Of a stretch of DNA of 64,000 nt, positions 1,845-62,316 are shown piece by piece (position 1 is the first letter of the stretch; every line of letters starts with the position of its first letter). A program made the translations under genes and the position numbers. The notes below the pieces were generated by a model. The model saw only the letters and a list, made by a program, of their open reading frames with translations. It was not told where the DNA came from and searched no databases. The stretch lies in the IMG/VR virus record IMGVR_UViG_3300046507_000667, positions 1 to 64,000 of that record; one strand, written 5' to 3'.

Positions 1845-1869
1845 TATAAAGTTGTTAAACAGTTAATTA
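1845..1869. promoter_or_regulatory. overlapping divergent late-type promoters (AACA-N6-TA on both strands)
   Basis: + AACA GTTAAT TA 1858-1869; - AACA ACTTTA TA 1856-1845. Confidence 0.7.
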
Positions 1870-1907
1870 GTTTGTAACTTCTCTTCTTTTTGCAAAGGAC
1901 TTATATC

Positions 1908-2309
1908 ATGCTTAAAATCGCACTATCATTTTTACATAACCTAGTAGGTAATCTTAGGTATGTACTACTCTTACTAGTCATTGCATTTGCTGGATACTAT
2001 ATCCATTCTTATATCAAGACTAGTGAGAAAAACCAAATCATCAGTGAAAATAACATCGTTTTGAAGAATACAGTTACCTCGAATGCAAAAGCAGACAAAG
2101 CTAAAGCCGAGATTACTGTGGTTCAAAGTGATGCAGTCTCCGCTACTATCGCTACAGCTAGTGATATTAGAAAGAAGACTGACATAGTTAAGAAAGCTAA
2201 TGAAGCTATTAGCACAAATCAAAAAGTATCAAATGATACTGTCAATGCAATTCAAGCATTATCAGATCAATTTGATGAAGATGTAGCTAATCTACCAGAC
2301 CTAAAATAA
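1908..2309 (+). CDS. inner-membrane spanin (Rz-like, i-spanin)
   Basis: N-terminal TM helix (YVLLLLVIAFAGYYI) then Ala/Lys-rich coiled coil; lipoprotein gene nearby. Confidence 0.7.
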   Translation: MLKIALSFLHNLVGNLRYVLLLLVIAFAGYYIHSYIKTSEKNQIISENNIVLKNTVTSNAKADKAKAEITVVQSDAVSATIATASDIRKKTDIVKKANEAISTNQKVSNDTVNAIQALSDQFDEDVANLPDLK

Positions 2310-2319
2310 GGAAAAGACC

Positions 2320-2742
2320 ATGACACCAATTCCATCAGTAGCTACTTATATGCTAGCTGAAACTCTAATACTTCTAGTAATTTTTCAGCTAAAGCACCTT
2401 GTTGCTGACTATATTTTCCAAACTAAATACATGCTTGGAAAATTTAAAGATACTAGTTGGGTTCTTCCTTTATCAGCCCATGCATTGGTTCATGGATCAA
2501 TCACATTTGCTATCATTGCAAGTTATATTGGAATTTTCAATGGAGTTCTAATTGGCTTGATTGATTTTATAATTCACTTTGTAATTGATCGTCTTAAAGT
2601 CATTGCAAGTCGTAAAGTTACTATTGATAAACCGAAATTTTGGATTGCTTTAGGAGTAGATCAAATGTGCCATCATTTGACTCACTATAGCTTCATATTC
2701 ATTGTCATCTGTAATAAATACAGTCACTTCTTGGTAAAATAA
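2320..2742 (+). CDS. DUF3307-family integral membrane protein
   Basis: KHLVADYIFQ, HALVHG, HFVID, DQMCH motifs with TM segments. Confidence 0.8.
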   Translation: MTPIPSVATYMLAETLILLVIFQLKHLVADYIFQTKYMLGKFKDTSWVLPLSAHALVHGSITFAIIASYIGIFNGVLIGLIDFIIHFVIDRLKVIASRKVTIDKPKFWIALGVDQMCHHLTHYSFIFIVICNKYSHFLVK

Positions 2743-2744
2743 TT

Positions 2745-3092
2745 ATGAAAACACTTCTTAAGGTCACCATCGCATTAGCTGTTATTTATCTTCTTACTGG
2801 TTGTGGAATCTTCCAGTCAAAAGTACCTGCTCAAATAGTTGCTAAAGAAAAACTAACAGTAGTTCCACTAGATAAGAATCTTTTTAGTTGCCCAAAACCA
2901 CAGCCTGTAAAGTCTAAGTTTACTAATCTGGCAAATAAAGAAGTTTACGAAAAGGAACTAGACGCCGCCTTCAATGAAGCCTATGCTGCACAAGTTCAAT
3001 GTTATAAGTCAATGGTAAATATTCAAGTTACTTATGATAAGACTGCTGCAAAGATTCTTGAAGCAAATCAACCTGACACAGCAAAAAAGTAA
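2745..3092 (+). CDS. outer-membrane lipoprotein spanin (Rz1-like, o-spanin)
   Basis: signal peptide with lipobox LLTG/C, Pro-rich CPKPQP, second Cys in C-terminal helix. Confidence 0.7.
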   Translation: MKTLLKVTIALAVIYLLTGCGIFQSKVPAQIVAKEKLTVVPLDKNLFSCPKPQPVKSKFTNLANKEVYEKELDAAFNEAYAAQVQCYKSMVNIQVTYDKTAAKILEANQPDTAKK

Positions 3093-3098
3093 TTTATT

Positions 3099-5009
3099 AT
3101 GCAGATTGCACAAGAAACGTTTAGTGTTGTCGAAGATATTGTCAACTTTATCTCGCTTCTTGTCTTTAAAGATGAGCAAGAAGCAGATAAGCAAGAGACT
3201 CAAGAATCTGCTGCTGCAGCGGCTACATATCTTTCAGCAGTATTGAAAACTGATGGTAATACTGAAGCTCAACGTGCTGTCATTATTAAGACATACGTTG
3301 AAAAGAATAAGTATTACAAATGGTTATGGCGTAAATATGGTGTACCTTACTACACTTCTCGTCTAGCTAAAGACTTAGATATTGTATATCAGCCCACTGC
3401 AGTATTTACATCTAAACCACTCCTACAGAATTACCGCTCTCTATATAAAGAGTGCTTAACGTATTTCTATTTTACTTCCTATTCCAAAGCATTGGAAGGG
3501 CAAGATAATTATCGTAATCTAGCACTATACATTATCAATCTTATGGCATTCATTAAGATGATTCATGTACAACTAGAAACTCCTTACGATATCGATTTGA
3601 TGAATGAGAACCAACTAGATAAGTTCATGATGAACTTTGGTATCTCATATTTCCGTCGTTTCCCTATTTACTATAAGCAAAATCTTGCTCGTAGACTTAA
3701 TACTCTAATTTCAGAGAAGGGTACTGACCGAGTCATTACTGATATCGTCAATGTCTTTGGATTCGATAACGTTGAGCTACATCGATACCATCTAGTACGT
3801 GATGTCACCGATCCAAAAAATAAGTTTAATAGTATCATTACTAAGCCTAAATTCATTAGTCATAATATTGCTCTACCTTCATTGGCAGTGGCTATTAAAA
3901 CTAATCAGTACAAGGTATGGAATTATAATTCAGTAGTTGATGATGATCCTACATGGCAAGCTGATCCAAATGAAGTAGCTTCATACAATTTTGATCATAT
4001 TCAAACTAAATACTTCTCAGTTGAATCCAACTTTGAACTATTTAAAAGTGCAATGGATACTACATATCTATTGAATGTCATTAAGGAAGTTCGTAGAGAT
4101 TATTCAGCTAGAGATAAGATGACGATCTATCTCACTAATATCTCTAACCTTCCTATCAAAATTGAAGATTTGATTCTTACTTTACAAGTACTAAGCTTGA
4201 TGTATCATGGTGTACAAGATGTAATCCAATATGATCTAGATAATATTGGTGACATTTATATGTACAATATTCATGACAGTTTAGTCGAAACTAAGAAATC
4301 ATTCAATACTGATGATGCTTCAGTTCGTGAGACAGTAATGCTCACTGATATGGATAGTGTAAATAGTTTTGGTTTTACTGATACTAATGCTTTACATAAG
4401 CAAGGTAAAAAGGTCCGTTCATATTATGAAGATCTTTTAGAATCAACTACAAAGTATCCTAAATTTAAAGCTCTTGTAGATTTATACAAGTTTAAATTCA
4501 TCCAAAAGTATAATAATAGTGTATTTAAACCATATGCTACTTATACTGACTATATCAGAGCCAATAATAAAGACCTTGGTACTTACCTTCAAGCTATCAC
4601 TGATATTGTAAGTGACACTGATCGTAAAGATGAAATTGAACGCCAAATTGTATATCTAACAGATGCTGTTAAAAATGCATTAGGTGATAATACTCTTGTA
4701 TTTGATAATGATGCTACTGACATTATGGCTTCATATATCCGTGAAGTAGTGGATGTATTCAAAGCATATACAGTAATGCTAAAAGATATGAAAGTATCTA
4801 TTCTTGTCAAAGATAAGACTGTATATAAGCTTATTGATGATTACTATTTCCATGCACATATGGAATGGACTGACAGAATTCCTGATTTAAGTGATGCTAT
4901 CAATCCTATGCATGGAAAAATGGATGCTTATAGAAAGAAAGGATTTATGTGGCGTGATTATGTACGAGTAAATGATTCTTTTACTATTAATCATGTAGAT
5001 TACTCATAG
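3099..5009 (+). CDS. baseplate wedge-like virion protein
   Basis: LNTLISEKGTDRVITDIVNVFGF resembles the KGT..G motif of P2 gpI / T4 gp7-type wedge proteins; followed by a collar/fibre-type gene. Confidence 0.55.
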   Translation: MQIAQETFSVVEDIVNFISLLVFKDEQEADKQETQESAAAAATYLSAVLKTDGNTEAQRAVIIKTYVEKNKYYKWLWRKYGVPYYTSRLAKDLDIVYQPTAVFTSKPLLQNYRSLYKECLTYFYFTSYSKALEGQDNYRNLALYIINLMAFIKMIHVQLETPYDIDLMNENQLDKFMMNFGISYFRRFPIYYKQNLARRLNTLISEKGTDRVITDIVNVFGFDNVELHRYHLVRDVTDPKNKFNSIITKPKFISHNIALPSLAVAIKTNQYKVWNYNSVVDDDPTWQADPNEVASYNFDHIQTKYFSVESNFELFKSAMDTTYLLNVIKEVRRDYSARDKMTIYLTNISNLPIKIEDLILTLQVLSLMYHGVQDVIQYDLDNIGDIYMYNIHDSLVETKKSFNTDDASVRETVMLTDMDSVNSFGFTDTNALHKQGKKVRSYYEDLLESTTKYPKFKALVDLYKFKFIQKYNNSVFKPYATYTDYIRANNKDLGTYLQAITDIVSDTDRKDEIERQIVYLTDAVKNALGDNTLVFDNDATDIMASYIREVVDVFKAYTVMLKDMKVSILVKDKTVYKLIDDYYFHAHMEWTDRIPDLSDAINPMHGKMDAYRKKGFMWRDYVRVNDSFTINHVDYS

Positions 5010-5011
5010 CC

Positions 5012-5023
5012 AACAAACCTTTA
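5012..5023 (+). promoter_or_regulatory. late-type promoter AACA-N6-TA
   Basis: AACA AACCTT TA 36 nt before ATG 5060. Confidence 0.7.
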
Positions 5024-5059: not shown

Positions 5060-5752
5060 ATGATCGAATTTTTAGATGAACCAAGGATTATGCGTCTGGA
5101 AGATCAGATGCTAATGAAGGATATGGCTGGTAGTAAGCGCACCAAAAACTTCATTGTAGTTCGTTCACCACGTACAGGTGAAATTCTTTGGACTAGACAC
5201 AATCTAGTAGTTAATGGTGGTCGTGAGTTTACACTCCGTAAGCTATTTAATATTCCTTATGCTGGTGAAACTGCAAGTCAACTTTGTAGTCGTAAGGTAG
5301 CATTCTTTGGTATTGGTTCAGGTGGCACTCCTGTAGCTGATCCATTTATGCCTATCGCTCCAACTCCAGCAGATTCAAAGCTAAATAATGAAGTAGCTTT
5401 CCGTTCAGCTACAACTACTGCTCCATTAACTGATACTGAATTAGGTCTATATAACGACCAACGTTCAGATGGTACTGGTGGCTTCTTATATTATAAGAAA
5501 GCCTTCACTGATATGGAGCTAGTACTAAATACTAATACTGATGAAGATTATGTCCATCTAACTCTTGATATTTCAGATTTAGATGCTCGTGGCGCACTTA
5601 TTAGTGAACTTGGATTATTCACCGCAATGAATAATTCTACTACAAATACATGGTCCAATTATCAACTATTTACTCGTATTACCTTCCAAACTGAACCAAT
5701 GTCAATTGACACTAGTAAAGGTTTGAATATCGATTACTACGTATATGCCTAA
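5060..5752 (+). CDS. tail collar/fibre attachment protein (DUF3751-like)
   Basis: FFGIGSGG...P..ADSKLNNEVAFR...ISELGLF pattern. Confidence 0.6.
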   Translation: MIEFLDEPRIMRLEDQMLMKDMAGSKRTKNFIVVRSPRTGEILWTRHNLVVNGGREFTLRKLFNIPYAGETASQLCSRKVAFFGIGSGGTPVADPFMPIAPTPADSKLNNEVAFRSATTTAPLTDTELGLYNDQRSDGTGGFLYYKKAFTDMELVLNTNTDEDYVHLTLDISDLDARGALISELGLFTAMNNSTTNTWSNYQLFTRITFQTEPMSIDTSKGLNIDYYVYA

Positions 5753-5759
5753 GTAAATA

Positions 5760-6480
5760 TAGTATTCTCATGGATATATTATTTTCATGATAATGTAATT
5801 CATAGAGAATACTAATAAATATGCAAACCGTATTATTGCAATATTTATGGATATATTATCTAAATGCACTTATGATGTTAATAAGAGCCTGAAGTACCGT
5901 ACTTAAGCTTAATGAATCACTAGAAAGCTTAAGATATATCCTATTATATTTACGATAAAGAAGCAAAGCTAATGCAATCACAAATCATTGATCTTAGCGA
6001 AGAACAGCAAGCACATACAGTTAATAGCCCGGAAGATGATCGCCGGGATGATGATTGGTGGCAAGCACTTCGTTAAAGATCTATTGATATATAAAAAAGA
6101 TTCATTAGTGTAGTAGGATATAGTAGGGTCTCCAGAGTATTGGAGTTATTTGGTTTGCGAGGACCAAAGTAGTAAAATGATTCCGATGCCACGGAGTCTC
6201 GTAGTTGCTGTATCTCTACGAAACTAAGATATTTGCCAACTGTAGTATATCCTTAGGGGTTTTATTGTAGTACCGAATCCTTCAATGGATTCAGGACCGG
6301 AAGTTTAGTAATACTAATAAATATAAGTGCGCCTGGATAGTCATAGGCAACTAATGGGAAGACTAGCTACATCGTAATTGATACATCGTAGACTAGCAAA
6401 AATGCTTTAAAGTGCAGGGTATATAGGAGTGATCTGTAGAAGTCACCCATATATCAAAAATAGCATTGTGTGGTAGACGT
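5760..6480 (+). ncRNA. candidate large structured non-coding RNA (~720 nt), family not recognised; strand inferred
   Basis: no ORF over 35 codons noticed; at least 12 stems plus long-range pairs 5911-18/6099-6106 and 5866-73/6323-30. Confidence 0.65.
5972..6076 (+). CDS. small ORF MQSQIIDLSEEQQAHTVNSPEDDRRDDDWWQALR (34 aa) inside the structured region
   Basis: ATG 5972 to TAA 6076, purine-rich AAAGAAG upstream. Confidence 0.35.
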   Translation: MQSQIIDLSEEQQAHTVNSPEDDRRDDDWWQALR

Positions 6481-6493
6481 GATCAAAATTTGG

Positions 6494-6522
6494 TCCTGAA
6501 GATCCTATATGGGTCTTCAGGA
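6494..6522. terminator. 12-bp stem hairpin (terminator or leader stem)
   Basis: TCCTGAAGATCC-TATAT-GGGTCTTCAGGA. Confidence 0.65.
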
Positions 6523-6562
6523 TTAATTCTGTTTGCTTCATTTTTTTTTTATAAGAGAAATT

Positions 6563-7978
6563 ATGGCTGATACTGATATCGAAAATCAAGAGAATACGGA
6601 TATCGCCACTGAAGAGCAACCTAAACCACCAAAAAGAATTGATCCAAAAGATCTTAATTCGGTATTTAGTTTGCTTGAATCCGATATTACAAAATCATTC
6701 TTGATGGAAATGTTTGCAGTAAATGGAGATGCTGATGATGCAATAGTACCTCCAAATACTCCTATCAAGATTGATCCAAAAGTAATTCCTGAAGGTAGTC
6801 CGATTACTCAGTTTAAGAATTACAAAGATTTGGTTGGTAAGGAAACTACCATCGGCCGGATCATAGTAAATTTATTCATTTTTGGTATTTATGTCCACTT
6901 TGCTAAAAAAGAAGGTGGCATTGCAGATTATCCACTATATCCATTAGTCAACTTTGTTGATGCAGCTTTTGATGCTAAGACAATGAAAAATGCTGACTCT
7001 AATATAGTTAAACTCTATATCAATAGTCAAATAGATCACCAAGTTCTAACTGATTATATTGATAGATTGCAGTGGTTAGGTTATACATCCGCTATCTTTA
7101 CTTTACCTAGTCTTGATCTTAAGACTATTGTACCTGATGAAGAAACTACAAGAGTCAAGAATAAGCTTATTGCAGATAACCGAGATGCTATTGAAAATAA
7201 AGACGTTCTTAAATTCACTGAAATTGAGAATAAGGTTCTTGATGTAGCATCAGAAGAGCTTACTAAAAAGGGTGCCACTGGTAAATTCATTTACGATAGT
7301 GGATATAATGGATCGTGGAGTAACAACTATAAAGTTACATCAGTTTTCCGTGGAGTTGCTACGAAGACTGCAGATCCAAATGCTTTTGAAATTTGCTTAT
7401 CTAACCTTACTGAAGGTGTATCTAAAGAAGATATTCCTGCCCATGCTGACTTGGCTGTTCAAGGTGCAGCAGGTCGTGCTATTGACACCCAAAAGGGTGG
7501 TTATCTAAATAAGATCTTTATTAATGCATTCTCTGGTGTAGTTGCAGATAAAGAAGGTTCTGATTGTGGATCAACTAGAACAATTGATGCCATTATCACT
7601 AACAAGAACTATGATAACTACAAGTTTAGGTATATCAAAGAGGGTAGTAAATTAGTTCGTCTAGACGATGATAATAAAGACAAATATCTTGGCAAAGTAA
7701 GCAAATTTAGAAGTCCGATGTTTTGTAAGACACAAAAAATTTGTAATCATTGCCTAGGTGATATGTTCTATGTGATGAAGATTGAAAATATTGGTATGCA
7801 CATTGCCCGTATTTCAACTCGAATCATGCTATTGTCAATGAAGGCATTCCACAATATGGCTCTTAAACCTACAGAGTTTAATCTAAATGACTATGTAGAA
7901 GAAGCATCTGTTAAGATTAAGCCTAGTAAGCCTATTACAGATTCTATCCCTAAACAAGATAGATTTGAATTAACTTAA
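6563..7978 (+). CDS. rpoC: phage multisubunit RNA polymerase beta' subunit, C-terminal part
   Basis: AIDTQKGGYL (bridge-helix-like), SDCGS, RSPMFC...ICNHCLG zinc site; virion vs non-virion enzyme not determinable. Confidence 0.9.
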   Translation: MADTDIENQENTDIATEEQPKPPKRIDPKDLNSVFSLLESDITKSFLMEMFAVNGDADDAIVPPNTPIKIDPKVIPEGSPITQFKNYKDLVGKETTIGRIIVNLFIFGIYVHFAKKEGGIADYPLYPLVNFVDAAFDAKTMKNADSNIVKLYINSQIDHQVLTDYIDRLQWLGYTSAIFTLPSLDLKTIVPDEETTRVKNKLIADNRDAIENKDVLKFTEIENKVLDVASEELTKKGATGKFIYDSGYNGSWSNNYKVTSVFRGVATKTADPNAFEICLSNLTEGVSKEDIPAHADLAVQGAAGRAIDTQKGGYLNKIFINAFSGVVADKEGSDCGSTRTIDAIITNKNYDNYKFRYIKEGSKLVRLDDDNKDKYLGKVSKFRSPMFCKTQKICNHCLGDMFYVMKIENIGMHIARISTRIMLLSMKAFHNMALKPTEFNLNDYVEEASVKIKPSKPITDSIPKQDRFELT

Positions 7979-11209: not shown

Positions 11210-11257
11210 ATAATATATTTACAATCCGTCATTAAAAATTCTTTATAAATATATTAT
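11210..11257. promoter_or_regulatory. divergent early-type promoters (AAATATATTAT on both strands)
   Basis: - copy 11220-11210, + copy 11247-11257. Confidence 0.7.
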
Positions 11258-12473: not shown

Positions 12474-12695
12474 CTGGTGTAGTTTGTATGAATAGTTAAT
12501 TCATAATACTTATATTTTCATATAAGATCAGACTATATCTTTACCCTATAAATAGAGTATTTTCTGTTTCCATTTCACTTGAAATGTACATTATAGTCGT
12601 TGAACGTTCCTCTTAAGAGGCTTCGCTGCTGATCACCTTCATCATTACATGTTAAGGACTTCCAGCAATTAAGAAAATTTAACCACGACAGATGG

Positions 12696-13448: not shown

Positions 13449-13472
13449 AGCATGTAAAATAGTAATTAAACT

Positions 13473-13484
13473 TATTTACATGTT
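13473..13484 (-). promoter_or_regulatory. intron-internal late-type promoter for the endonuclease
   Basis: AACA TGTAAA TA, 24 nt upstream of ATA 13448. Confidence 0.6.
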
Positions 13485-13489
13485 ATTTT

Positions 13490-18062: not shown

Positions 18063-18074
18063 TAATTTCTTGTT
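18063..18074 (-). promoter_or_regulatory. late-type promoter AACA-N6-TA
   Basis: AACA AGAAAT TA upstream of portal operon. Confidence 0.7.
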
Positions 18075-18900: not shown

Positions 18901-18902
18901 TT

Positions 18903-19517: not shown

Positions 19518-19550
19518 AGTATAAGATTTATGTAAGTTAGAATAAACTAC

Positions 19551-22212: not shown

Positions 22213-22223
22213 ATAATATATTT
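22213..22223 (-). promoter_or_regulatory. early-type promoter AAATATATTAT
   Basis: exact motif just after terminator 22249-22277. Confidence 0.65.
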
Positions 22224-29244: not shown

Positions 29245-29345
29245 AATAGTCTCTTACTTAATTATTGATAAACTAAGTTCTTATGAGGATACAACACTTT
29301 CCTAATGTATATTTCTTGTTGTGGTGCTTTTCAGCTAATTACTAG

Positions 29346-32216: not shown

Positions 32217-32292
32217 GGAATAGCTTTCCTAAGTTTATTAGTTGTATCTTTATGTTATTCGCTATAAAAATATGGAAGTTCTTGTCAATATA

Positions 32293-32303
32293 ATAATATA
32301 TTT
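32293..32303 (-). promoter_or_regulatory. early-type promoter AAATATATTAT
   Basis: exact motif upstream of DNA polymerase catalytic subunit. Confidence 0.65.
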
Positions 32304-32323: not shown

Positions 32324-32335
32324 AACATAGTAATA
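32324..32335 (+). promoter_or_regulatory. late-type promoter AACA-N6-TA
   Basis: AACA TAGTAA TA. Confidence 0.6.
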
Positions 32336-34857: not shown

Positions 34858-34900
34858 TATAAGGATGTTCTTTTTGATTCTTATTTTACAAATATATTAT
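34858..34900. promoter_or_regulatory. divergent promoters: late-type (-, 34869-34858) and early-type (+, 34890-34900)
   Basis: AACA TCCTTA TA on -, AAATATATTAT on +. Confidence 0.65.
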
Positions 34901-39140: not shown

Positions 39141-39151
39141 AAATATATTAT
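39141..39151 (+). promoter_or_regulatory. early-type promoter AAATATATTAT
   Basis: exact motif upstream of 39199. Confidence 0.65.
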
Positions 39152-40892: not shown

Positions 40893-40931
40893 TTTTGTTT
40901 TACCTTATAATTTTTAAATAAAGGATTGGTT

Positions 40932-41765
40932 GTGCTTAAGCAAACTGACGATAATACGTTTGTCATCAATAATGGTGGTTCAGTACGTAGTAACAATCTG
41001 AGTTTAGCAGGTGCATCATCTAAGAAGACTAAGTTTGTATTGGCAGTAGACTATGATGAAGTCATTGTTAATATCAATCATAAATGGATGCAGAAGCTGT
41101 TGAAAGATGAAGTGATTAGTAATTACTTCTCGCCAGAGCATCGAATTGTAGCTAATCTAGAAGCAAATCTTCGTACAGACTACGATGTATTTAACTGGCT
41201 TGGTATCAAGCATGGCGCTCCAGAATTTGAACGTGGAATGAGTTTGTATTTTAATGATCCTAAGTTCTATAGTAAGCTAAAGCCAACTAAGTACTTTGAA
41301 TCGATTTATCAAGCTCGTCACTTCTTTAGTGAAATTCATATCATTACTAAATGTGGTGAAGATCTTGATGCACCATGTAATATTGATAAGAAGCGCCAGA
41401 TGGCTTTCCTATTCCGTAATTTTGACGGAATTAAGCTAGGTTTTCACTTCATCAAGAGTTCAGAATCTAAAGCACAATATTTCAAGCAAAAAGGTATTAA
41501 GTTTGATTCCTTTGTGGATGATGCACAATCCAATATGCTTGACATGATCAATGTATTCAAAGATGAATTTAATTTTGAAGCATTGATGCCATTGTATTGC
41601 TATAACTTCCTGACTCCTCAGAAGATTGATCCTGCATGGATTCATGATGGTCGAAACCAATTCCGGTTCTTCCATAATCTTGAGAGTTTGAATACTCAGC
41701 AAATGGGTCAAATTGTTAAAGAACTAGAAGCAAAACAGGCTGAACAGATGCTTGTAGCGGCATAA
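40932..41765 (+). CDS. HAD-superfamily 5'(3')-deoxyribonucleotidase (NT5C-like)
   Basis: VLAVDYDEVI (DxD), IHIITK, FVDD motifs; GTG start after AAGGA. Confidence 0.75.
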   Translation: MLKQTDDNTFVINNGGSVRSNNLSLAGASSKKTKFVLAVDYDEVIVNINHKWMQKLLKDEVISNYFSPEHRIVANLEANLRTDYDVFNWLGIKHGAPEFERGMSLYFNDPKFYSKLKPTKYFESIYQARHFFSEIHIITKCGEDLDAPCNIDKKRQMAFLFRNFDGIKLGFHFIKSSESKAQYFKQKGIKFDSFVDDAQSNMLDMINVFKDEFNFEALMPLYCYNFLTPQKIDPAWIHDGRNQFRFFHNLESLNTQQMGQIVKELEAKQAEQMLVAA

Positions 41766-41775: not shown

Positions 41776-41815
41776 GGGCTAATGGGAGAAATTCCATTAG
41801 CCCAACAATCTTTTA
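41776..41815 (+). promoter_or_regulatory. hairpin 41776-41803 immediately followed by late-type promoter 41804-41815
   Basis: GGGCTAATGG...CCATTAGCCC then AACA ATCTTT TA. Confidence 0.65.
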
Positions 41816-41855: not shown

Positions 41856-43244
41856 ATGAATTTAGATGTGTTAAATATTGACGACTTTATTAAGGTTAAT
41901 GGGATTAAGCAAGTATCTTCACCATTTATCTTTGCTGCAGATAAAACACCTGATCCAGAAGGTATCTTCTCATATGATATTTTTGGTCGAGTTGGTTCTG
42001 TAGCTCGTAAAGTCAATTATGGTTATGTGGATCTTAAACGAGAGTTTATTCATCCATTCGTATACAATATCTTGCAATCAGTTTATCGTAATCTTCCTCT
42101 GATTATTTCAGGTGATAAATACGTTAAACTTGGTCCAGATGGTACCATTCTCAATGCTAAGGACGATGATCCTGAAGGTCAGACAGGTATTGACTTTATT
42201 ATTGATAATTGGGAAAAGATTTCTTGGGAATCAAAATCTTCTACAGCTAGTCGTGAAAAGAAGTTAGCTATTCTTAGTGATTTTTCACGCAGTGAAATCT
42301 TCGTTACTAAGTGGCTAATTATTCCTGCAATGTATCGTGATATTAATTTACATTCACAAGATACAGGCAAGATTAGTATGGATGAAGTTAATTCATTTTA
42401 TAATAAGTTAATTAATCTTACAAATTCTGAATCAATTACTTTTGCTTCAAGTACTAATACTCAGTCTGCAGTGCAGATGAATCTAGTAGATATTCATAAC
42501 TATTTAACAAAGAAACTTTCAGGTAAGCGTGGTGTTATTCGTCAAGCTGTTATGGGTAAGACTATTGACCATGCAGCAACAAACGTTATTTCTGCACCAA
42601 GGTTCAATGATGAACACTATAAGAATCAGCTAGTACCTTATAACTATATTGGAATTCCATTGTATGTTATTTGTGCTACATTCTATCCATATTTCTTAAA
42701 ATGGATGGAAGATTATTTTTATGGTATTGAACAAAATGCTGAATTCGTATTCGGTGGTCAAGTATATGACTCCAGTATGGCCGCTAATGTAGTCAATTCA
42801 GAATCTATCCGTAAATTGATTACTGCTTACGTTAAAGATAAGACAAAACGTATTCGTACTGCACCATTTTCACTTAATAAGACAAATAGAAAGCTACAGT
42901 TCCGTGATGCTATTATTAATTTCCGTGACTATACTCTAACTGATCTTTTATTTGAAGCTGCAGAGCAAATTGTTAGTAATAAGTTAGTCCTTAGTACTCG
43001 TTATCCTGTTACTGGTTCAGAATCTATTATTATGAACAAAGTACGGATTTTAACTACAGAAGAAACTATTGATATGACACCAAGGCTTCGTACCCTTAGT
43101 GAATCAGCTAAGTTTCAATATAGTAAGTATCCAAGCTTCCCATATGATAGTACTGGCGCGGTTATTGCAGATCATGTACGTTGGATTGATTCCCTAGTAC
43201 CAAATAACTCCTTCCTAGCTGGTATGGGTGGTGACTATGACGGT
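41856..43244 (+). CDS. rpoC: phage RNA polymerase beta' subunit, N-terminal/catalytic part, exon 1
   Basis: PDPEGIFSYDIFG, GKRGVIRQAVMGK, RYP; ends GGDYDG; 515 aa spliced. Confidence 0.92.
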
Positions 43245-43290
43245 AGTTTTGCAATAAATTTATAGATTGTGCTAAAATGGGTGGTGATTA

Positions 43291-43302
43291 AACAAAATCA
43301 TA
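43291..43302 (+). promoter_or_regulatory. intron-internal late-type promoter
   Basis: AACA AAATCA TA, 16 nt before ATG 43319. Confidence 0.6.
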
Positions 43303-43318
43303 ATTTGTATATAGGATT

Positions 43319-44688: not shown

Positions 44689-44699
44689 AAATATATTAT
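44689..44699 (+). promoter_or_regulatory. early-type promoter AAATATATTAT
   Basis: exact motif. Confidence 0.65.
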
Positions 44700-45707: not shown

Positions 45708-45885
45708 TGGATAACTATGTCTCAAACCAGTAATGGTAAGGGGCATAGTTATTCAATTTCTTTTTTGTGAATATATTATCTTTGTGAAAGAAAATCTTAA
45801 TATAAATAAAGAACTTCTAGGAAAATAATTTTTTCACCTATAGTTTCTAATCCATGTTATAATAACGGTTCTGAGTGTTATTTTT

Positions 45886-45897
45886 AACATAAACTTA
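45886..45897 (+). promoter_or_regulatory. late-type promoter AACA-N6-TA
   Basis: AACA TAAACT TA upstream of beta subunit. Confidence 0.7.
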
Positions 45898-45926: not shown

Positions 45927-47435
45927 ATGCCAATTGGATCGATTCAAAGTGCATTGGTTTCAGCATTCCAAGACGAAAATCCTGAAACTTTTAATGAAGA
46001 CCTCATCTATATGCGCCATAAAGAACGCGCATCATTGCATGACTACTTCAAAGATGTATTTGCATCACTGAAGCTTCAAGGTATTACATATCTTGAAAGT
46101 CGCACTATTACTGATGAATCTGAATTCGAGAAGTATGTACCAAAGCGTACAAAGGCAATTGAAGAAAATCGGATGGACTTGATTGAAGCTAAGTTCCTCC
46201 TTGAATTTGAAGGTGAAAAGAAGGAAACATCAATCCATCTTTTCTTCCCTAAGCTAGTAGATGATTTCTTCTTTTATATCAATGGTAATCGCTACTTTGC
46301 TATTTATCAGATTTCAGATCGTAACTTTTATTCAACTCGTACAGGTCTCTTCCTTAAGACTCTATTGATGCCTTTGGGTCTTCAGTTTAGGAAGTCTGAA
46401 TTTGAGACTCTTGAAGGTACTCATTATGAAGGTAAAGAATATGTGCTAGACTTCTTCAAGACAAAGTTCCAAAACTTTGATGCATTGAAGAATATGTTCT
46501 ATTACTTCTTCATTAAGTTTGGAGTAACAGAAGCAATTGATATGATCTTTGAAAATACTGAAGATTTTACCAAGGTAGCATTGGTAGATGATGCAGATGA
46601 AATTGAAGGTTATGAAACAATTGAACTCCGTAAAGATCTATTCATCAAGTTCTATAGCAATCCAGGACAGAATGAGCAGAACTATATTAATCTGGTTGCA
46701 ACACTAGTAGCTGCTCTTAAAGGTATTCGTAAGACATCTATTACAGATAATGAAGACTATTGGAAGCGTAAGATCCTTAATAGCCCTACAGCAAAGCTTA
46801 CTAAAGCTGACAAAGCACTTATTAGTCTTGAACGTGTTCTTGATGAACGCACTAAGCGGAATCTTAAGGAAGTTACTGATCCAGCATACAAGCAAGATGT
46901 ATATGGCTTGATTCGTTGGATGACTTATAACTTTGAGAATCTTTATAATATTGATACAGTCGATATCTACAATCGTCGTCTGCGTCTATATGAATACATG
47001 CTGTATCCTCTGCTAATTAAGTTTTCAGATGCATCATATCGTATTCTTAATAGTCGTAACCTTGATTTGAAACGTTTAGAAACGGTATTTTCTAATATCG
47101 GCCCTATGTTCATCATTAAACGTTTGATTACTAACGAACTTTTCCGTTATAATAATGCTACGTCAAGTCTTGAACTATTCAGTGCGGCACTTCGTTGGAG
47201 TTCAAGAGGTTCTCAGTCTCTTGGTTCGTCTGGTGGTAGTATTACCATCAAGTATCGTGCTGTCCATCCTTCTTACCTTGGTGTCGTTAGCCTTAATGCA
47301 GCAAGTGCATCAGATCCTGGGATGACAGGTACTTTGGTACCAATGTCAAAGAATGTTGATACCATGTTCTTTGAACCAGATGCTCCTCAAGATATTTATA
47401 GCCATTCAGTAGATGCGATGTTGGGAGTTGAGTAA
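45927..47435 (+). CDS. rpoB: phage RNA polymerase beta subunit, N-terminal part
   Basis: FFYINGNRYFAIYQI, YRAVHPSYLGVVSLNAASASDPGMTG (beta fork-loop region). Confidence 0.88.
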   Translation: MPIGSIQSALVSAFQDENPETFNEDLIYMRHKERASLHDYFKDVFASLKLQGITYLESRTITDESEFEKYVPKRTKAIEENRMDLIEAKFLLEFEGEKKETSIHLFFPKLVDDFFFYINGNRYFAIYQISDRNFYSTRTGLFLKTLLMPLGLQFRKSEFETLEGTHYEGKEYVLDFFKTKFQNFDALKNMFYYFFIKFGVTEAIDMIFENTEDFTKVALVDDADEIEGYETIELRKDLFIKFYSNPGQNEQNYINLVATLVAALKGIRKTSITDNEDYWKRKILNSPTAKLTKADKALISLERVLDERTKRNLKEVTDPAYKQDVYGLIRWMTYNFENLYNIDTVDIYNRRLRLYEYMLYPLLIKFSDASYRILNSRNLDLKRLETVFSNIGPMFIIKRLITNELFRYNNATSSLELFSAALRWSSRGSQSLGSSGGSITIKYRAVHPSYLGVVSLNAASASDPGMTGTLVPMSKNVDTMFFEPDAPQDIYSHSVDAMLGVE

Positions 47436-47444
47436 CATTTAGAT

Positions 47445-47560
47445 AGTTGTGCTTTCCGTCTGATGCTAATTCAAAGTAATTTAGCTAAGAATGTGGCGGC
47501 GCACTCTATCCTCCTAAGTATTTCTCAAAATCCCTTAACCCTAAAAGGTTAAGGGATTTT
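47445..47560 (+). ncRNA. candidate small RNA or structured leader between a late-type promoter (47434-47445) and a terminator (47531-47556)
   Basis: nested stems GTGC/GCAC, CCGTC/GGCGG, GCTAATT/AATTTAGC. Confidence 0.4.
47531..47556 (+). terminator. terminator hairpin
   Basis: TCCCTTAACC...GGTTAAGGGA followed by T-run. Confidence 0.8.
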
Positions 47561-48634: not shown

Positions 48635-48692
48635 AACAATGGGTTAGTTAAAAATTCAAATGTCCTAAAGATCCTTATTGGGTCTTTAGGAC
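48635..48692 (+). promoter_or_regulatory. late-type promoter (48635-48646) followed by leader hairpin (48662-48692)
   Basis: AACA ATGGGT TA; GTCCTAAAGATCC...GGGTCTTTAGGAC. Confidence 0.6.
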
Positions 48693-48720
48693 TACTCTTT
48701 ACTCTTCTTTTTTTTTGATT

Positions 48721-53729: not shown

Positions 53730-53741
53730 TAACTTTATGTT
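53730..53741 (-). promoter_or_regulatory. late-type promoter AACA-N6-TA
   Basis: AACA TAAAGT TA. Confidence 0.65.
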
Positions 53742-54598: not shown

Positions 54599-54599
54599 A

Positions 54600-55709: not shown

Positions 55710-55724
55710 TATTTATCCTTAGAA

Positions 55725-56846: not shown

Positions 56847-56887
56847 TATATATCCTATTGGTTTTAGTGTAAGACGAAACTCAGTTC

Positions 56888-57022
56888 TAAATCATTGTTA
56901 TTTTTAAGCATGAGAAAGATCTATGATAGACTTATATTTTTAAAACCATCTAACTAGTTAAATTAATGCTTTTAAGGATTAAGGTAAAATCATTAAACAT
57001 TTTATATTGAAACATCATAATA
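56888..57022. promoter_or_regulatory. divergent late-type promoters (- 56899-56888; + 57011-57022)
   Basis: AACA ATGATT TA and AACA TCATAA TA. Confidence 0.65.
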
Positions 57023-57055
57023 ATTAAATTTTTCTATTAAAATAAGATCTTTAAT

Positions 57056-58075: not shown

Positions 58076-58087
58076 TAAAGGTTTACT

Positions 58088-60667: not shown

Positions 60668-60671
60668 TATC

Positions 60672-60683
60672 AACATTCTCTTA
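60672..60683 (+). promoter_or_regulatory. late-type promoter AACA-N6-TA
   Basis: AACA TTCTCT TA. Confidence 0.7.
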
Positions 60684-60721
60684 GTTAGCATATAGAAACC
60701 AACTTTTACACAGGAATTGCT

Positions 60722-62254
60722 ATGTCAAAGTATACAGAAAGATTGGCAATGCGTCGTAAGGGTCTTCAAGAAGCTGGTCGTGAACGTGCTGAAAAGTTAC
60801 TTACAGAACAGACACAACTTCAAGAAGATTCACACGCAAAGTCATTCGTTCCACGTCGCAGTAAATTGCGCAATAGCTTTAATCAGCGTCAACGTGAGCT
60901 AAACGAAAGCCATCGCGATCGTATGCACATGTTTATTGCTGAAGTAGTTAAGCAAGCTTGTCCAGTAGATCTCTCACATGTACCACTTGAAGAAATGGTA
61001 CATCAGATTGCTGAAGTCCGTGAGACATTCAAGTCAGTCATTACAGAGAATCCAGATATTTGGCAAACACCTATTCCAGATGCAGGTACTAAGACAGCTG
61101 TAATGTCTCTAGGTAATGCCAATGGTGATTGTACTGCTGTTGATATGATCAAAGCAATGGGTACAGTATGTGCTCAGTTTGATAAGCTTGGTCGTACACA
61201 GACAGGCTCAGAAGCTAAAGATACAATTATCGGTGCTGCTAATTTCATGGATACCTTTATTGCTAAGGGTAATGATGAACATGCAATCTTCACACCACAA
61301 TTTGAGCAATTCCGTCAATCACTAATGGGTAGCCTTGCTGACAATGCTCGTAGCAAAGTCGTAATGTCCATTAAACAAGATCGTGAAATTGCAAGTCAAA
61401 AGCAAACTATCGTTGAAAATTGCCTAACAGAAGATGTACAAGGTATTGCTCGTGTTAAGTTTGAAAAAGAAGTAAAAGATCTAGACGCTCGTCCAAATAT
61501 TCTTCGTGAAGTATTCAATAGTGTCAAGCTCTTTAATGAGCATGAAACTGGTGATTCACAAGACTATATGAATGAAACAGTCTTTAATCTTACAGTTCTA
61601 GAAGTTCTTAATGAACTAGGTGAAGTCAAGGGCAAAGCTGATGACATCTGCTTACAACTTCGTAAGGATCGTCGCAGTTTTTTAAATGAAGGCCATGGAC
61701 GTTATTGGGGAGGTGCTTTTAAAGATGCAGTTACTTTTAAGCATGTAGGCAACTCCATGGCTTCTCTTTTCTCAGGTATTGCAAGCAATATCAAACGTAC
61801 TCATGAAATTGTAGATAGTACTATTTCATGGCTAGAAGATGAAAAGAAAAATAGTCATTTTGATTTCAAAAAGATTGATGAAAGCCATCTTAAGAATTTT
61901 TTTATCCATCAAGATAAAGCAGTTCATTGGCGCTTTTATTTTCTTTTAGATGATACTAAATTTGAGCAAATCAAAAAAGGTATTTCTAATGAAGGTAAAG
62001 ATACTGGGTGGTTTGATTTTTCATATAAGCCAGATGTCCTTGGTCCAGTAGTTCGTATTGCTGGTAATAAGTCAGTAGATGCATTTATTAGCCTAGCTAA
62101 GAAGTATAAAGCTCGTGCTGATGAGATTGCAGGACTTATTAAGAAAGATCCACGTAATGCTAAGGCAGTTAAACATGAAATGAAGATTGTTGCTGCAGGT
62201 GCAATGGATTTTGATTTAATGGTTAAAAACCTAGTACGTATGGCAGCAGTGTAA
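60722..62254 (+). CDS. probable head-associated protein
   Basis: 510 aa, repeated LTE/LNE motifs, late promoter. Confidence 0.7.
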   Translation: MSKYTERLAMRRKGLQEAGRERAEKLLTEQTQLQEDSHAKSFVPRRSKLRNSFNQRQRELNESHRDRMHMFIAEVVKQACPVDLSHVPLEEMVHQIAEVRETFKSVITENPDIWQTPIPDAGTKTAVMSLGNANGDCTAVDMIKAMGTVCAQFDKLGRTQTGSEAKDTIIGAANFMDTFIAKGNDEHAIFTPQFEQFRQSLMGSLADNARSKVVMSIKQDREIASQKQTIVENCLTEDVQGIARVKFEKEVKDLDARPNILREVFNSVKLFNEHETGDSQDYMNETVFNLTVLEVLNELGEVKGKADDICLQLRKDRRSFLNEGHGRYWGGAFKDAVTFKHVGNSMASLFSGIASNIKRTHEIVDSTISWLEDEKKNSHFDFKKIDESHLKNFFIHQDKAVHWRFYFLLDDTKFEQIKKGISNEGKDTGWFDFSYKPDVLGPVVRIAGNKSVDAFISLAKKYKARADEIAGLIKKDPRNAKAVKHEMKIVAAGAMDFDLMVKNLVRMAAV

Positions 62255-62261
62255 TAAGTAT

Positions 62262-62291
62262 CCCTTAACTCTCTTTACTGAGGGTTAAGGG
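62262..62291 (+). terminator. terminator hairpin
   Basis: CCCTTAAC...GTTAAGGG followed by T-rich run. Confidence 0.8.
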
Positions 62292-62304
62292 GTTTTATTT
62301 TTCC

Positions 62305-62316
62305 AACAATTCCTTA
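62305..62316 (+). promoter_or_regulatory. late-type promoter AACA-N6-TA
   Basis: AACA ATTCCT TA. Confidence 0.7.

What the first reader, a model, noticed from the sequence alone, without database searches (positions are those of the whole stretch)
1845..62316. AR9-type AACA-N6-TA late promoters genome-wide, hinting at a uracil-DNA phage with a Gram-negative host
Seen: exact AACA-N6-TA upstream of at least 16 late/structural/RNAP units (1858+, 1856-, 5012+, 18074-, 32324+, 32983+, 34869-, 41804+, 45886+, 47434+, 48635+, 53741-, 56899-, 57011+, 60672+, 62305+) and inside two introns. My rough chance estimate is about 4% per 60-nt window, so the upstream enrichment is not random. Established: this matches the late promoter consensus of Bacillus phage AR9, whose non-virion RNAP needs template-strand uracils opposite the AA, and AR9/PBS1 and phiR1-37 carry dU in place of dT. 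Inference: this phage may have dU-DNA while carrying Gram-negative-type spanins.
Basis: partly seen in the sequence, partly recalled or inferred. Interest (0 to 1): 0.7.

Follow-up and report, generated by a model that had tools for sequence, protein, structure and literature searches.

The report
AR9-type late promoters, likely uracil-DNA phage
The short signal AACA-N6-TA marks the late-gene promoters of an uncultivated 249-kb rhizosphere jumbo phage related to Yersinia phage phiR1-37 and Bacillus phage AR9, and its own polymerase parts suggest, without proving, that its DNA carries uracil instead of thymine.

Summary
Observation confirmed. All 16 listed sites exist. The motif is rare overall: 27 in the window against 71 expected, and 97 in the 249,347-bp genome. 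It is concentrated in front of genes: 56 of 97 lie in the 9.6% of the genome that is intergenic, and 49 genes have it upstream in sense against 10 in antisense. It is the top hit (p 8e-32) of an unbiased scan of all 4mer-N2..10-2mer patterns. The same test is positive in AR9, where the motif is experimentally proven, and in phiR1-37. Between this phage and phiR1-37 the motif sits before the same orthologous genes (odds ratio 17, p 2e-9).

The genome is complete. It encodes orthologues of all five AR9 non-virion RNA polymerase subunits, including the promoter-specificity subunit gp226. In that orthologue the valine that excludes thymine is kept, as in 30 of 30 family members. The genome lacks ThyA, ThyX, dUTPase and thymidylate kinase. 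It also has AR9's early promoter (ATATATTAT-N6-G, 56 copies) and a spanin-like pair shared with phiR1-37.

Verdict: real late promoters (about 0.9), a Gram-negative host (about 0.8), and uracil-DNA likely but only inferred (about 0.7). This is a new member of a known kind. Two modest new points: the consensus, never reported for phiR1-37, holds across the Gram-negative branch, with a preferred G after TA; and the motif is strongly avoided inside genes.

The parts
1845..1856 (-). late promoter motif; drives the endonuclease gene 1108-1836 (likely ATG near 1815), orthologue of phiR1-37 g237
   Evidence: the orthologues in phiR1-37 and AR9 also carry the motif
1858..1869 (+). late promoter motif, divergent from the previous one; drives i-spanin-like 1908-2309, DUF3307 protein 2320-2742, lipobox protein 2745-3092 and virion protein 3099-5009
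5012..5023 (+). late promoter motif before virion structural protein 5060-5752
   Evidence: phiR1-37 orthologue g233 also has it
13473..13484 (-). late promoter motif at the exon 1/intron border of the split portal-like gene, upstream of HNH endonuclease 12696-13196
   Evidence: 277 nt to the called ATG, so the assignment is less sure
18063..18074 (-). late promoter motif before 17508-18041 and the operon running down to the portal-like gene 13483-15387
   Evidence: phiR1-37 orthologue also has it
32245..32256 (-). late promoter motif before the DNA polymerase catalytic part 30288-32216; an early motif lies 45 nt further upstream, so the gene probably has dual (continuous) expression
32324..32335 (+). 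late promoter motif before virion structural protein 32355-32921
   Evidence: orthologues in phiR1-37 and AR9 g153 have it; AR9 g153 is an experimentally late gene, PMC5312081
32983..32994 (+). late promoter motif before 33030-33899
34858..34869 (-). late promoter motif before 33964-34830
   Evidence: phiR1-37 orthologue has it
41804..41815 (+). late promoter motif before virion RNAP beta'-N exon 1 (41856-43265); a terminator hairpin at 41775-41804 abuts it
   Evidence: AR9 orthologue g145 has the motif
43291..43302 (+). late promoter motif inside the group I intron, before HNH endonuclease 43319-44101
45886..45897 (+). late promoter motif before the non-virion RNAP beta-N orthologue 45927-47435; an early motif lies at 45771
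47434..47445 (+). late promoter motif overlapping the stop codon of 45927-47435, before 47592-48629
48635..48646 (+). late promoter motif before the 1049-aa protein 48715-51864
   Evidence: phiR1-37 orthologue has it
53730..53741 (-). late promoter motif before 52874-53668
56888..56899 (-). late promoter motif before 55725-56846 and the following genes
57011..57022 (+). late promoter motif, divergent from 56899(-), before virion proteins 57056-58075 and 58088-60667
   Evidence: orthologues in phiR1-37 and AR9 g213 have it
60672..60683 (+). late promoter motif before 60722-62254
62305..62316 (+). late promoter motif before 62339-63511
   Evidence: orthologues in both relatives have it
29293..29304 (+). 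doubtful match: intergenic, but with no same-strand gene downstream and no G after TA
5774..5782 (+). early (virion-RNAP type) promoter core ATATATTAT; a second copy lies at 5851-5859
11210..11218 (-). early promoter core before 10644-11180
11249..11257 (+). early promoter core before 11306-11701
22213..22221 (-). early promoter core in the block of small orphan genes
32293..32301 (-). early promoter core before DNA polymerase part 30288-32216
34892..34900 (+). early promoter core before 34956-35468 and DNA polymerase exonuclease part 35481-36914
39143..39151 (+). early promoter core before 39199-39927
44691..44699 (+). early promoter core before 44748-45044
45771..45779 (+). early promoter core before the non-virion RNAP beta-N gene
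45927..47435 (+). non-virion RNAP beta-N subunit, orthologue of AR9 gp105, which forms half of the -10 uracil pocket
   Evidence: 35% identity, E 8e-84; R363 kept, K375 to R, N382 kept
41856..43265 (+). virion RNAP beta'-N, exon 1; it ends inside the catalytic D-[FY]-D-G-D motif
6533..7978 (+). virion RNAP beta'-C orthologue (AR9 g264, phiR1-37 g231)
1908..2309 (+). i-spanin-like protein: N-terminal membrane helix followed by a long helical region
   Evidence: same architecture and position as phiR1-37 g236
2745..3092 (+). o-spanin-like lipoprotein (lipobox LLTGC)
   Evidence: reciprocal best hit at 33% with phiR1-37 g235, which has lipobox LAGC
40926..41765 (+). HAD-like protein, homologue of AR9 g151, which its authors annotate as 5'(3')-deoxyribonucleotidase; a lead for a thymidylate-removing enzyme
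   Evidence: 27% identity, E 1e-11, DxDEV motif kept; no Pfam support

Best explanation
AACA-N6-TA is the late promoter of this phage. The window is the first 64 kb of a complete 249-kb jumbo phage from rhizosphere metagenomes, sister to Yersinia phage phiR1-37 and more distantly related to Bacillus phages AR9/PBS1. Transcription follows the AR9 scheme. A virion-borne multisubunit RNA polymerase starts early genes at ATATATTAT-N6-G. An early-made non-virion polymerase (split beta and beta' subunits plus a gp226-type sigma-like subunit) then starts late genes at AACA-N6-TA. These late genes encode virion proteins, virion RNAP subunits, spanin-like proteins and intron endonucleases. The polymerase reads the complement of AACA in the template strand, and initiation is at the final A (inferred). 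In AR9 the two template bases opposite AA must be uracil, and the residue that excludes thymine's methyl group is conserved here. The genome also has no way of its own to make dTMP or destroy dUTP. Its DNA therefore most likely contains deoxyuridine in place of thymidine, which would keep the short motif silent on host DNA. The host is most likely Gram-negative. What is shown: the motif statistics, the orthologues, the residue conservation and the gene absences. What is inferred: the start site, the uracil content and the host.
For: Motif statistics.
- It is the top pattern of an unbiased scan, p 8e-32, with 49 genes upstream-sense against 10 antisense.
- 56 of 97 copies lie in the 9.6% of the genome that is intergenic.
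- Dinucleotide shuffles of the upstream regions give 16.1 +/- 4.2.
- Functional sites carry extra information, with G after TA in 67% of upstream sites (58% of intergenic against 19% of in-ORF copies).

Controls in relatives.
- The same test gives 71/20 in AR9, where 94 of 118 mapped non-early start sites carry the motif (PMC5312081), and 59/14 in phiR1-37.
- Orthologue conservation with phiR1-37: 29 both, 11 and 8 one only, 53 neither; odds ratio 17, p 2e-9.
- In 8 high-GC gp226-bearing relatives, 22 of 38 copies lie in the 12% of sequence that is intergenic, p 2e-11.

Selection inside genes.
- There are 31 sense and 5 antisense copies. The in-phase control spacings N3 and N9 give 64/60 sense and 30/30 antisense.

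Polymerase machinery.
- Reciprocal best hits exist to all five AR9 non-virion RNAP subunits: gp105, gp089, gp154, gp270 and gp226.
- The gp226 orthologue (genome 242577-244043, minus strand) has E 2e-28 to AR9 gp226. Its only PDB match is 7S01_A, AR9 gp226, at E 2e-26.
- V206, Y210 and S245 are kept, and the YSDxV[IM]WxYLxN helix is invariant in 30 of 30 sequences. V206G lets AR9's enzyme accept thymine (PMC9209446).

Other support.
- The early motif has 56 copies, 44 of them upstream-sense, including one before the gp226 gene as in AR9.
- No ThyA, ThyX, dUTPase, thymidylate kinase or tubulin in a genome that CheckV rates 100% complete, and two dCMP-deaminase-family genes are present. Iyer et al. 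(PMC7824862) describe this absence pattern as required for uracil DNA.
- Sigma-70-like promoters are not enriched: 80 against 86 +/- 9.5.
- Host: the spanin-like pair is shared with phiR1-37 and absent from AR9.
Against: - No transcription start site was observed. RNA-library contigs cover the capsid gene only and stop 38 nt short of the predicted start.
- No chemistry was done, so uracil is inferred.
- There is no Ugi homologue and no DCD-type dCTP deaminase.
- The DNA reached word depth 95 in a metagenome whose library preparation is not on record. From general knowledge, archaeal-type proofreading PCR enzymes stall on uracil templates, so high depth would be unexpected if such PCR was used.
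- Lacking thymidylate synthase does not by itself prove uracil DNA.
- Several pocket-lining residues differ from AR9: I207M, Y246F, F261A, K262N.
- The spanin call rests on architecture only; Pfam gave no spanin family.
- Gene calls were crude longest-ORF calls.
Confidence: 0.7

Rival explanations
1. The motif is the late promoter read by the gp226-type polymerase, but the DNA carries thymine or some other base, such as 5-hydroxymethyluracil, rather than uracil. The polymerase of this branch would tolerate or require that base.
For: Nothing here measures base composition. No Ugi homologue was found. There is no DCD-type dCTP deaminase. The contig reached depth 95 in a metagenome library of unknown preparation. 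Some pocket-lining residues differ from AR9.
Against: The valine whose replacement by glycine lets AR9 accept thymine is invariant in 30 of 30 sequences (PMC9209446). The nearest cultured relative, phiR1-37, has uracil DNA and likewise lacks a recognisable Ugi (PMC7598289). ThyA, ThyX, dUTPase and thymidylate kinase are all absent from a complete genome. A hydroxymethylating enzyme would normally be a ThyA-family member, and none is present.
Confidence: 0.2
2. AACA-N6-TA is a conserved upstream element that is not a promoter, for instance an RNA processing site, a binding site for another regulator, or a by-product of A+T-rich intergenic composition.
For: No start sites were mapped in this phage. 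Intergenic DNA is A+T-rich.
Against: Dinucleotide shuffles, the antisense orientation, other spacings and permuted tetramers all fail to reproduce the signal. The identical motif is the biochemically proven promoter in AR9, with the same roughly 30-nt distance to start codons (PMC5312081, PMC5449584). The cognate specificity subunit is present. Antisense copies inside genes are depleted about six-fold, which fits a signal that acts on DNA in either orientation rather than one on the mRNA.
Confidence: 0.05
3. Chance clustering of a low-information motif.
For: Only six bases are specified.
Against: p 8e-32 and first rank among all comparable patterns. Conserved placement across orthologues, p 2e-9.
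Confidence: 0.01

Closest known systems
Late promoters of Bacillus phage AR9/PBS1, read by the non-virion RNAP holoenzyme with gp226 (PMC5312081, PMC5449584, PMC9209446)
   Same: The core AACA-N6-TA is the same, with W at -2 and a 5'UTR of about 30 nt. All five polymerase subunits have orthologues. The gp226 2.1bis helix with V206 and Y210 is kept. The early promoter core ATATATTAT-N6-G is the same, including one before the gp226 gene. ThyA, ThyX and dUTPase are absent. Homing endonuclease genes in introns have their own promoters.
   Different: Proteins are only 30-37% identical. G follows TA in 67% of sites here against 17% in AR9. The TG variant of the start is not enriched here, 4 sense against 2 antisense. 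Avoidance inside genes is much stronger. There is no Ugi homologue. Spanin-like genes replace a Gram-positive lysis set. The start site and the uracil dependence are untested here.
Yersinia phage phiR1-37, a uracil-DNA jumbo phage of a Gram-negative host
   Same: It is the nearest cultured relative, with 101 reciprocal best hits at a mean 42% identity and 51% in virion RNAP beta'-N. The motif sits before 29 shared orthologous units. G after TA is preferred, 87% there against 67% here. The spanin-like pair and local gene order are shared. The beta' gene is interrupted at the same catalytic motif.
   Different: The literature reports that no late consensus could be found for phiR1-37 (PMC5312081, PMC4848604); the consensus seen here is therefore an addition. 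This phage is uncultivated, 249 kb against 262 kb, with a DUF3307 gene inserted between the spanin-like genes and stronger motif avoidance.
phiKZ non-virion RNAP with gp68 and its TATG late promoters
   Same: A split beta/beta' polymerase with a distantly related fifth subunit, and independence from host RNAP (PMC7598289).
   Different: The promoter differs (TATG at the start site). phiKZ has thymine DNA, a phage nucleus and tubulin; no tubulin gene is present here.
Bacterial sigma-70 -10 element
   Same: A short element about 10 nt upstream of the start, recognised in single-stranded form by base-flipping into pockets (PMC9209446).
   Different: In the AR9 system the template strand is read, not the non-template strand. 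Sigma-70-like sites are not enriched in this window.

Membership tests
AR9-type late promoter (gp226/non-virion RNAP dependent) | Consensus A(-11)ACA-(6N)-T-A/G upstream of late genes | tested here: met
   49 genes upstream-sense against 10 antisense, top of the unbiased scan. The downstream genes are virion proteins and virion RNAP subunits.
AR9-type late promoter (gp226/non-virion RNAP dependent) | Transcription starts at the last base of the motif | tested here: inconclusive
   Metatranscriptome contigs cover the capsid transcription unit up to 38 nt short of the predicted start and nothing upstream of it.
AR9-type late promoter (gp226/non-virion RNAP dependent) | A cognate gp226-like specificity subunit is encoded | tested here: met
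   Genome 242577-244043 (minus strand), 488 aa, E 2e-28 to AR9 gp226. The sole PDB match is 7S01_A at E 2e-26.
AR9-type late promoter (gp226/non-virion RNAP dependent) | Four split beta/beta' core subunits of the non-virion enzyme | tested here: met
   Reciprocal best hits to AR9 gp105, gp089, gp154 and gp270.
AR9-type late promoter (gp226/non-virion RNAP dependent) | Uracil required at template positions -11 and -10 | not testable with these tools
   Only indirect evidence: V206 is invariant, and beta-N R363 and N382 are kept.
Uracil-DNA jumbo phages (PBS1/AR9, S6, phiR1-37) | dU replaces dT in virion DNA | not testable with these tools
   No chemistry is possible. The sequence reads T by convention.
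Uracil-DNA jumbo phages (PBS1/AR9, S6, phiR1-37) | Absence of thymidylate synthase (ThyA or ThyX) and of dUTPase (criterion of PMC7824862) | tested here: met
   No matches in a genome rated 100% complete, with positive controls responding. The same result holds for phiR1-37 and AR9.
Uracil-DNA jumbo phages (PBS1/AR9, S6, phiR1-37) | Phylogenetic placement within the clade | tested here: met
   The best hits of virion RNAP beta'-N are phiR1-37 at 51%, AR9/PBS1 at 36% and S6-like phages at 30%. There are 101 and 64 reciprocal best hits to phiR1-37 and AR9.
Uracil-DNA jumbo phages (PBS1/AR9, S6, phiR1-37) | Inhibitor of host uracil-DNA glycosylase (Ugi in PBS1/AR9) | tested here: not met
   No blastp or tblastn match to AR9 Ugi. 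phiR1-37, a proven uracil-DNA phage, has none either, so sequence-level Ugi is not universal in the group.
Two-component spanins (Gram-negative lysis) | A type-II inner-membrane protein with a helical periplasmic part, plus a small outer-membrane lipoprotein with a lipobox, encoded together | tested here: inconclusive
   The architecture is present at 1908-2309 and 2745-3092, with counterparts phiR1-37 g236/g235. A DUF3307 gene separates the two genes, there is no family-level match, and no function was tested.

The most novel reading that the evidence does not exclude
This phage and at least 25 further uncultivated gp226-bearing lineages, some with 50-66% G+C, would form a broad soil and rhizosphere radiation of uracil-DNA jumbo phages of Gram-negative bacteria. 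All would use uracil-dependent, template-strand promoter recognition at AACA-N6-TA(G). The combination of upstream enrichment with strong avoidance inside genes, especially in antisense, would then be a sequence-only marker for such genomes in metagenomes.
Probability: 0.45. Interest if true: 0.65.

Novelty: new member of a known kind. Interest (0 to 1): 0.5.

Why it matters
Uracil-DNA phages are known from only a handful of isolates, and only one of those, phiR1-37, infects a Gram-negative host. The AR9 promoter mechanism, in which a sigma-like subunit reads uracils in the template strand, has been demonstrated in a single Bacillus phage.

Three results bear on how general it is:
- The same promoter and the same uracil-selecting residues appear in an abundant rhizosphere phage.
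- They also appear in phiR1-37, where transcriptomics had not found a late consensus.
- They appear in high-GC metagenomic relatives.

This suggests the mechanism is a clade-wide trait rather than a curiosity. It gives testable promoter predictions for phiR1-37. It also offers a way to flag candidate uracil genomes from sequence alone. Such genomes may be under-represented in PCR-amplified metagenomes and resistant to many restriction enzymes.

Tried and rejected
- Megablast of 15 kb against 50,697 phage records: no match. Relatives were found only at the protein level.
- RNA evidence for start sites: six RNA runs hold parts of the capsid gene. The data are assembled contigs from related strains (90-99% identical). 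They cover the capsid unit only and give no 5' ends.
- A second lay on window 54501-60500 found no RNA at all and one continuous DNA contig. This argues that the capsid signal is RNA rather than DNA carry-over, but it maps nothing.
- Ugi homologue: none.
- DCD-type dCTP deaminase: none.
- Pfam gave nothing for the spanin-like proteins or for the HAD-like protein 40926-41765.
- Orthologue conservation of the motif against AR9 is weak (odds ratio 2, not significant), presumably because operon structure has diverged.
- The synonymous-codon shuffle overstates expectation. Control spacings also fall to 0.5-0.8 of expected, so AACA is generally rare in genes. I therefore quote depletion relative to the in-phase spacings N3 and N9, not the raw 3-fold and 11-fold.
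- The AACA-N6-TG start variant of AR9 is not enriched here.
- Host sigma-70 promoters are not enriched.


Full report
**What the window is.**
The window is bases 1-64000 of a single-contig, 249,347-bp virus record with direct terminal repeats, which CheckV rates 100% complete. G+C is 35%. DNA runs from rhizosphere metagenomes hold it; one holds the tested 6-kb stretch (window 54501-60500) inside a single 28-kb contig at word depth 95. No phage record matches at the nucleotide level. At the protein level the virion RNA polymerase beta'-N gene (41856-43265) is closest to:
- Yersinia phage phiR1-37, 51% identity;
- Bacillus phages AR9, PBS1 and relatives, 33-37%;
- S6-like Staphylococcus jumbo phages, about 30%.

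This is the group of jumbo phages that the literature reports to carry uracil in place of thymine (PMC7598289).

**Checking the observation.**
All 16 listed sites are exact matches on the stated strand. The motif is not common; it is rare and misplaced toward gene fronts.
- The window has 27 copies against 70.9 +/- 8.0 in dinucleotide shuffles.
- The genome has 97 copies, and 56 of them lie in the 9.6% of the genome that my ORF calls leave intergenic.
- 49 of 307 genes have it within 100 nt upstream in the sense orientation, against 10 in antisense. Shuffling those same upstream regions gives 16.1 +/- 4.2, with a maximum of 32 in 300 shuffles.
- For the window alone the figures are 17 of 77 genes against 4.6 +/- 2.1.
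- I scanned every 4mer-N(2..10)-2mer pattern without prior choice. AACA-N6-TA came first at p 8e-32. The runner-up, at 1e-18, is part of a different A+T-rich signal.
- Permuted tetramers and spacings of 5 or 7 show nothing.
- Copies in intergenic DNA carry extra information that copies inside ORFs lack. The next base is G in 58% of intergenic copies against 19% of in-ORF copies, followed by T, T.
- The predicted 5'UTR has a median of 32 nt.

**Controls in relatives.**
I fetched the whole genomes of AR9 and phiR1-37 and ran the identical procedure. AR9 is the positive control, because differential RNA-seq tied 94 of 118 non-early start sites to AACA-(6N)-TA/G with the last base as the start (PMC5312081).
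- AR9 gives 71 sense against 20 antisense.
- phiR1-37 gives 59 against 14.
- Control patterns are flat in both.

The AR9 authors state that no late consensus could be obtained for phiR1-37, and the phiR1-37 transcriptome paper found only the A/dU-rich early-type motif (PMC5312081, PMC4848604). The phiR1-37 result is therefore new as far as the searchable literature shows. It fits the report that AR9's enzyme is partly active on phiR1-37 genomic DNA (PMC5449584).

Placement of the motif is also conserved.
- Among 101 reciprocal-best-hit gene pairs between this phage and phiR1-37 (mean 42% identity), 29 pairs have the motif in both, 11 and 8 in one only, and 53 in neither. The odds ratio is 17 and p is 2e-9.
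- Against AR9 the association is weak, with an odds ratio of 2 that is not significant.
- The two Gram-negative-branch genomes share a preference for G after TA, 67% here and 87% in phiR1-37, against 17% in AR9. The TG start variant used by AR9 is not enriched here.

**Avoidance inside genes.**
Within ORFs there are 31 sense and 5 antisense copies.
- A synonymous-codon shuffle predicts 98 +/- 8 and 54 +/- 6.
- The same shuffle also over-predicts the control spacings, where observed/expected is 0.5-0.8. AACA is therefore generally scarce in genes.
- Against the in-phase spacings N3 and N9 (64/60 sense, 30/30 antisense), the N6-specific deficit is about two-fold in sense and six-fold in antisense.
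- phiR1-37 and AR9 show the same direction but weaker.

Selection against stray copies, strongest for those that would drive antisense transcripts, is what one expects if six specified bases suffice to start transcription.

**The machinery.**
Reciprocal best hits exist to all five subunits of the AR9 non-virion RNA polymerase holoenzyme (with AR9 annotation):

| AR9 subunit | Role | Orthologue here |
|---|---|---|
| gp105 | beta-N | window 45927-47435, 35% identity, E 8e-84 |
| gp089 | beta-C | genome 232420-234363 |
| gp154 | beta'-C | genome 96766-98571 |
| gp270 | beta'-N | genome 212431-213783 |
| gp226 | promoter specificity | genome 242577-244043, minus strand, 488 aa, 30% identity, E 2e-28 |

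- The gp226 orthologue's only match in the PDB is AR9 gp226 (7S01_A, E 2e-26).
- The AR9 structure paper shows that the -10 uracil sits in a pocket between the gp226 '2.1bis' helix and beta-N. V206 leaves no room for thymine's methyl group, and V206G makes thymine acceptable. Y210 stacks on the -9 guanine (PMC9209446).
- Here V206, Y210 and S245 are kept, I207 is M and Y246 is F. In beta-N, R363 and N382 are kept and K375 is R.
- A search of 5.8 billion proteins found 28 clusters of this family, all unnamed. Across these plus AR9 and phiR1-37, Y202, S203, V206, W208, Y210 and L211 are invariant in 30 of 30 sequences.
- Sixteen IMG/VR loci encode the family. In eight high-GC relatives, 22 of 38 motif copies lie in the 12% of sequence that is intergenic (p 2e-11). 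Control spacings give 4 of 28.

**The other half of the programme.**
- The commonest upstream 9-mer is ATATATTAT, with 56 copies, 44 of them upstream in sense. It is followed six bases later by G, usually as TG. This is the core of AR9's early, virion-polymerase promoter AAATATATATTAT-(6N)-G (PMC5312081).
- Early and late motifs almost never precede the same gene within 120 nt: 50 genes late, 44 early, 1 both.
- The gp226 gene has an early motif 50 nt upstream, as in AR9.
- The beta-N gene has an early motif at 45771 and a late one at 45886. The polymerase catalytic gene 30288-32216 has both as well. These resemble AR9's 'continuously expressed' class.
- Genes after late motifs in the window are mostly virion proteins or virion RNAP subunits.
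- Sigma-70-like sites are not enriched, 80 against 86 +/- 9.5.

**Uracil.**
Evidence for:
- clade membership;
- the uracil-selecting residues described above;
- no ThyA, ThyX, dUTPase or thymidylate kinase in a complete genome, with the control genomes responding. phiR1-37 and AR9 give the same picture. Iyer et al. name the absence of ThyA/ThyX and dUTPase as the necessary negative determinants and note that most jumbo phages have one of the two synthases (PMC7824862);
- two dCMP-deaminase-family genes that could supply dUMP;
- no tubulin, in line with the nucleus-less AR9 group.

A lead only: window 40926-41765 is homologous to AR9 g151, which its authors annotate as a 5'(3')-deoxyribonucleotidase (27% identity, E 1e-11). 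The DxDEV motif is kept, and the gene lies next to the virion beta'-N gene in all three genomes. Pfam does not confirm it.

Evidence against, or missing:
- no Ugi homologue, though phiR1-37 has none either;
- no DCD-type dCTP deaminase;
- no chemical evidence;
- a depth of 95 in a library of unknown preparation. From general knowledge, that would be surprising if an archaeal-type proofreading PCR enzyme had been used.

I put uracil DNA at about 0.7.

**Host.**
- The late operon starting at 1858 encodes three small proteins in order. The first has one N-terminal membrane helix and a long helical tail (1908-2309). The second is a multi-pass DUF3307 protein (2320-2742). The third is a 115-aa protein with lipobox LLTGC (2745-3092).
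- phiR1-37 has the same arrangement without the middle gene. g236 has a membrane helix plus a helical region. g235 has lipobox LAGC, a shared SCPKP motif, and is a reciprocal best hit at 33%.
- No AR9 counterpart of these three genes came up among the reciprocal best hits.
- This is the architecture of a two-component spanin, which only makes sense with an outer membrane.
- The nearest clusters of the DUF3307 protein are mostly from Pseudomonadota, a weak hint.

I put a Gram-negative host at about 0.8.

**RNA.**
Root and soil RNA libraries contain contigs 90-99% identical to the capsid gene. They span L037 142-1745. The gene runs from 149 to 1705 and the predicted start is at 1783. Nothing lies upstream of the predicted start. 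The same libraries show nothing on window 54501-60500. This is compatible with the model and suggests real transcription of relatives in roots, but it does not map a start site.

**Verdict.**
This is a new, uncultivated member of the phiR1-37/AR9 kind.
- a clade-wide late consensus that includes phiR1-37;
- a branch-specific G after TA;
- marked intragenic avoidance of the motif.

Noticed in passing
window 5774, 5851, 11218(-), 11249, 22221(-), 32301(-), 34892, 39143, 44691, 45771; 56 copies genome-wide: A second promoter class, ATATATTAT followed six bases later by G (usually TG). It has the same core as AR9's early virion-RNAP promoter and is almost mutually exclusive with the late motif.
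   Followed up: yes
phiR1-37 genome (L003-L016): phiR1-37 carries AACA-N6-TA(G) upstream of 59 genes in sense against 14 in antisense, although published work states that no late promoter consensus could be found for it.
   Followed up: partly
window 43246-44473 (intron), 43319-44101 (HNH gene), 44474 to about 44630 (exon 2): The virion RNAP beta'-N gene is interrupted by a group I intron exactly inside the catalytic D-[FY]-D-G-D motif. Exon 2 resumes with D and a stretch resembling the conserved region that follows the motif in bacterial beta'. phiR1-37 g178 ends at the same point and is also followed by an HNH gene, so its annotation is probably truncated in the same way.
   Followed up: partly
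window 11771-15387 (-): The portal-like gene is split by a group I intron (Rfam match 12509-12752) carrying HNH endonuclease 12696-13196. Exon 2 appears to be 11771-12349, which matches later positions of the same PHROG family.
   Followed up: partly
window 5753-6532: A 780-nt stretch without a convincing ORF carries two tandem early promoter cores and precedes the virion RNAP beta'-C gene. Rfam gathering thresholds found nothing there. It could be a long leader, a non-coding RNA or an unrecognised intron.
   Followed up: no
window 18335-30236 (-): About 30 consecutive small minus-strand ORFs have no reciprocal best hit in phiR1-37 or AR9 and carry no late motif. Only one exact early core (22221) was found, so variant early promoters may exist.
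   Followed up: no
whole genome, inside ORFs: AACA followed by TA is under-represented at every spacing tested (observed/expected 0.5-0.8 under a synonymous-codon shuffle), not only at N6. The tetramer itself may be avoided. In sense orientation, N7 is as depleted as N6.
   Followed up: partly
window 2320-2742: A DUF3307 multi-pass membrane protein is inserted between the two spanin-like genes. It is absent at this position in phiR1-37, and its nearest relatives are mostly from Pseudomonadota. It may be a holin-like or host-derived gene.
   Followed up: partly
window 40926-41765: A HAD-like homologue of AR9 g151, annotated there as a 5'(3')-deoxyribonucleotidase, lies next to the virion RNAP beta'-N gene in this phage, phiR1-37 and AR9. 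It is a candidate for the thymidylate phosphatase activity known from PBS2 infection (recalled, not tested).
   Followed up: partly
L042-L049, L052, L054 (IMG/VR contigs): gp226-family genes also occur on jumbo-phage contigs with 50-66% G+C, some of them 259-263 kb long. There too the AACA-N6-TA motif is concentrated in intergenic DNA.
   Followed up: partly
L037 (genome 83701-85700): Root and soil RNA libraries hold contigs 90-99% identical to the major capsid gene, which indicates related strains that are transcriptionally active in roots.
   Followed up: partly
window 48662-48692: A strong hairpin (13 pairs) sits 16 nt downstream of the predicted late start at 48646, inside the leader of the 1049-aa gene. 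Its function is unknown.
   Followed up: no
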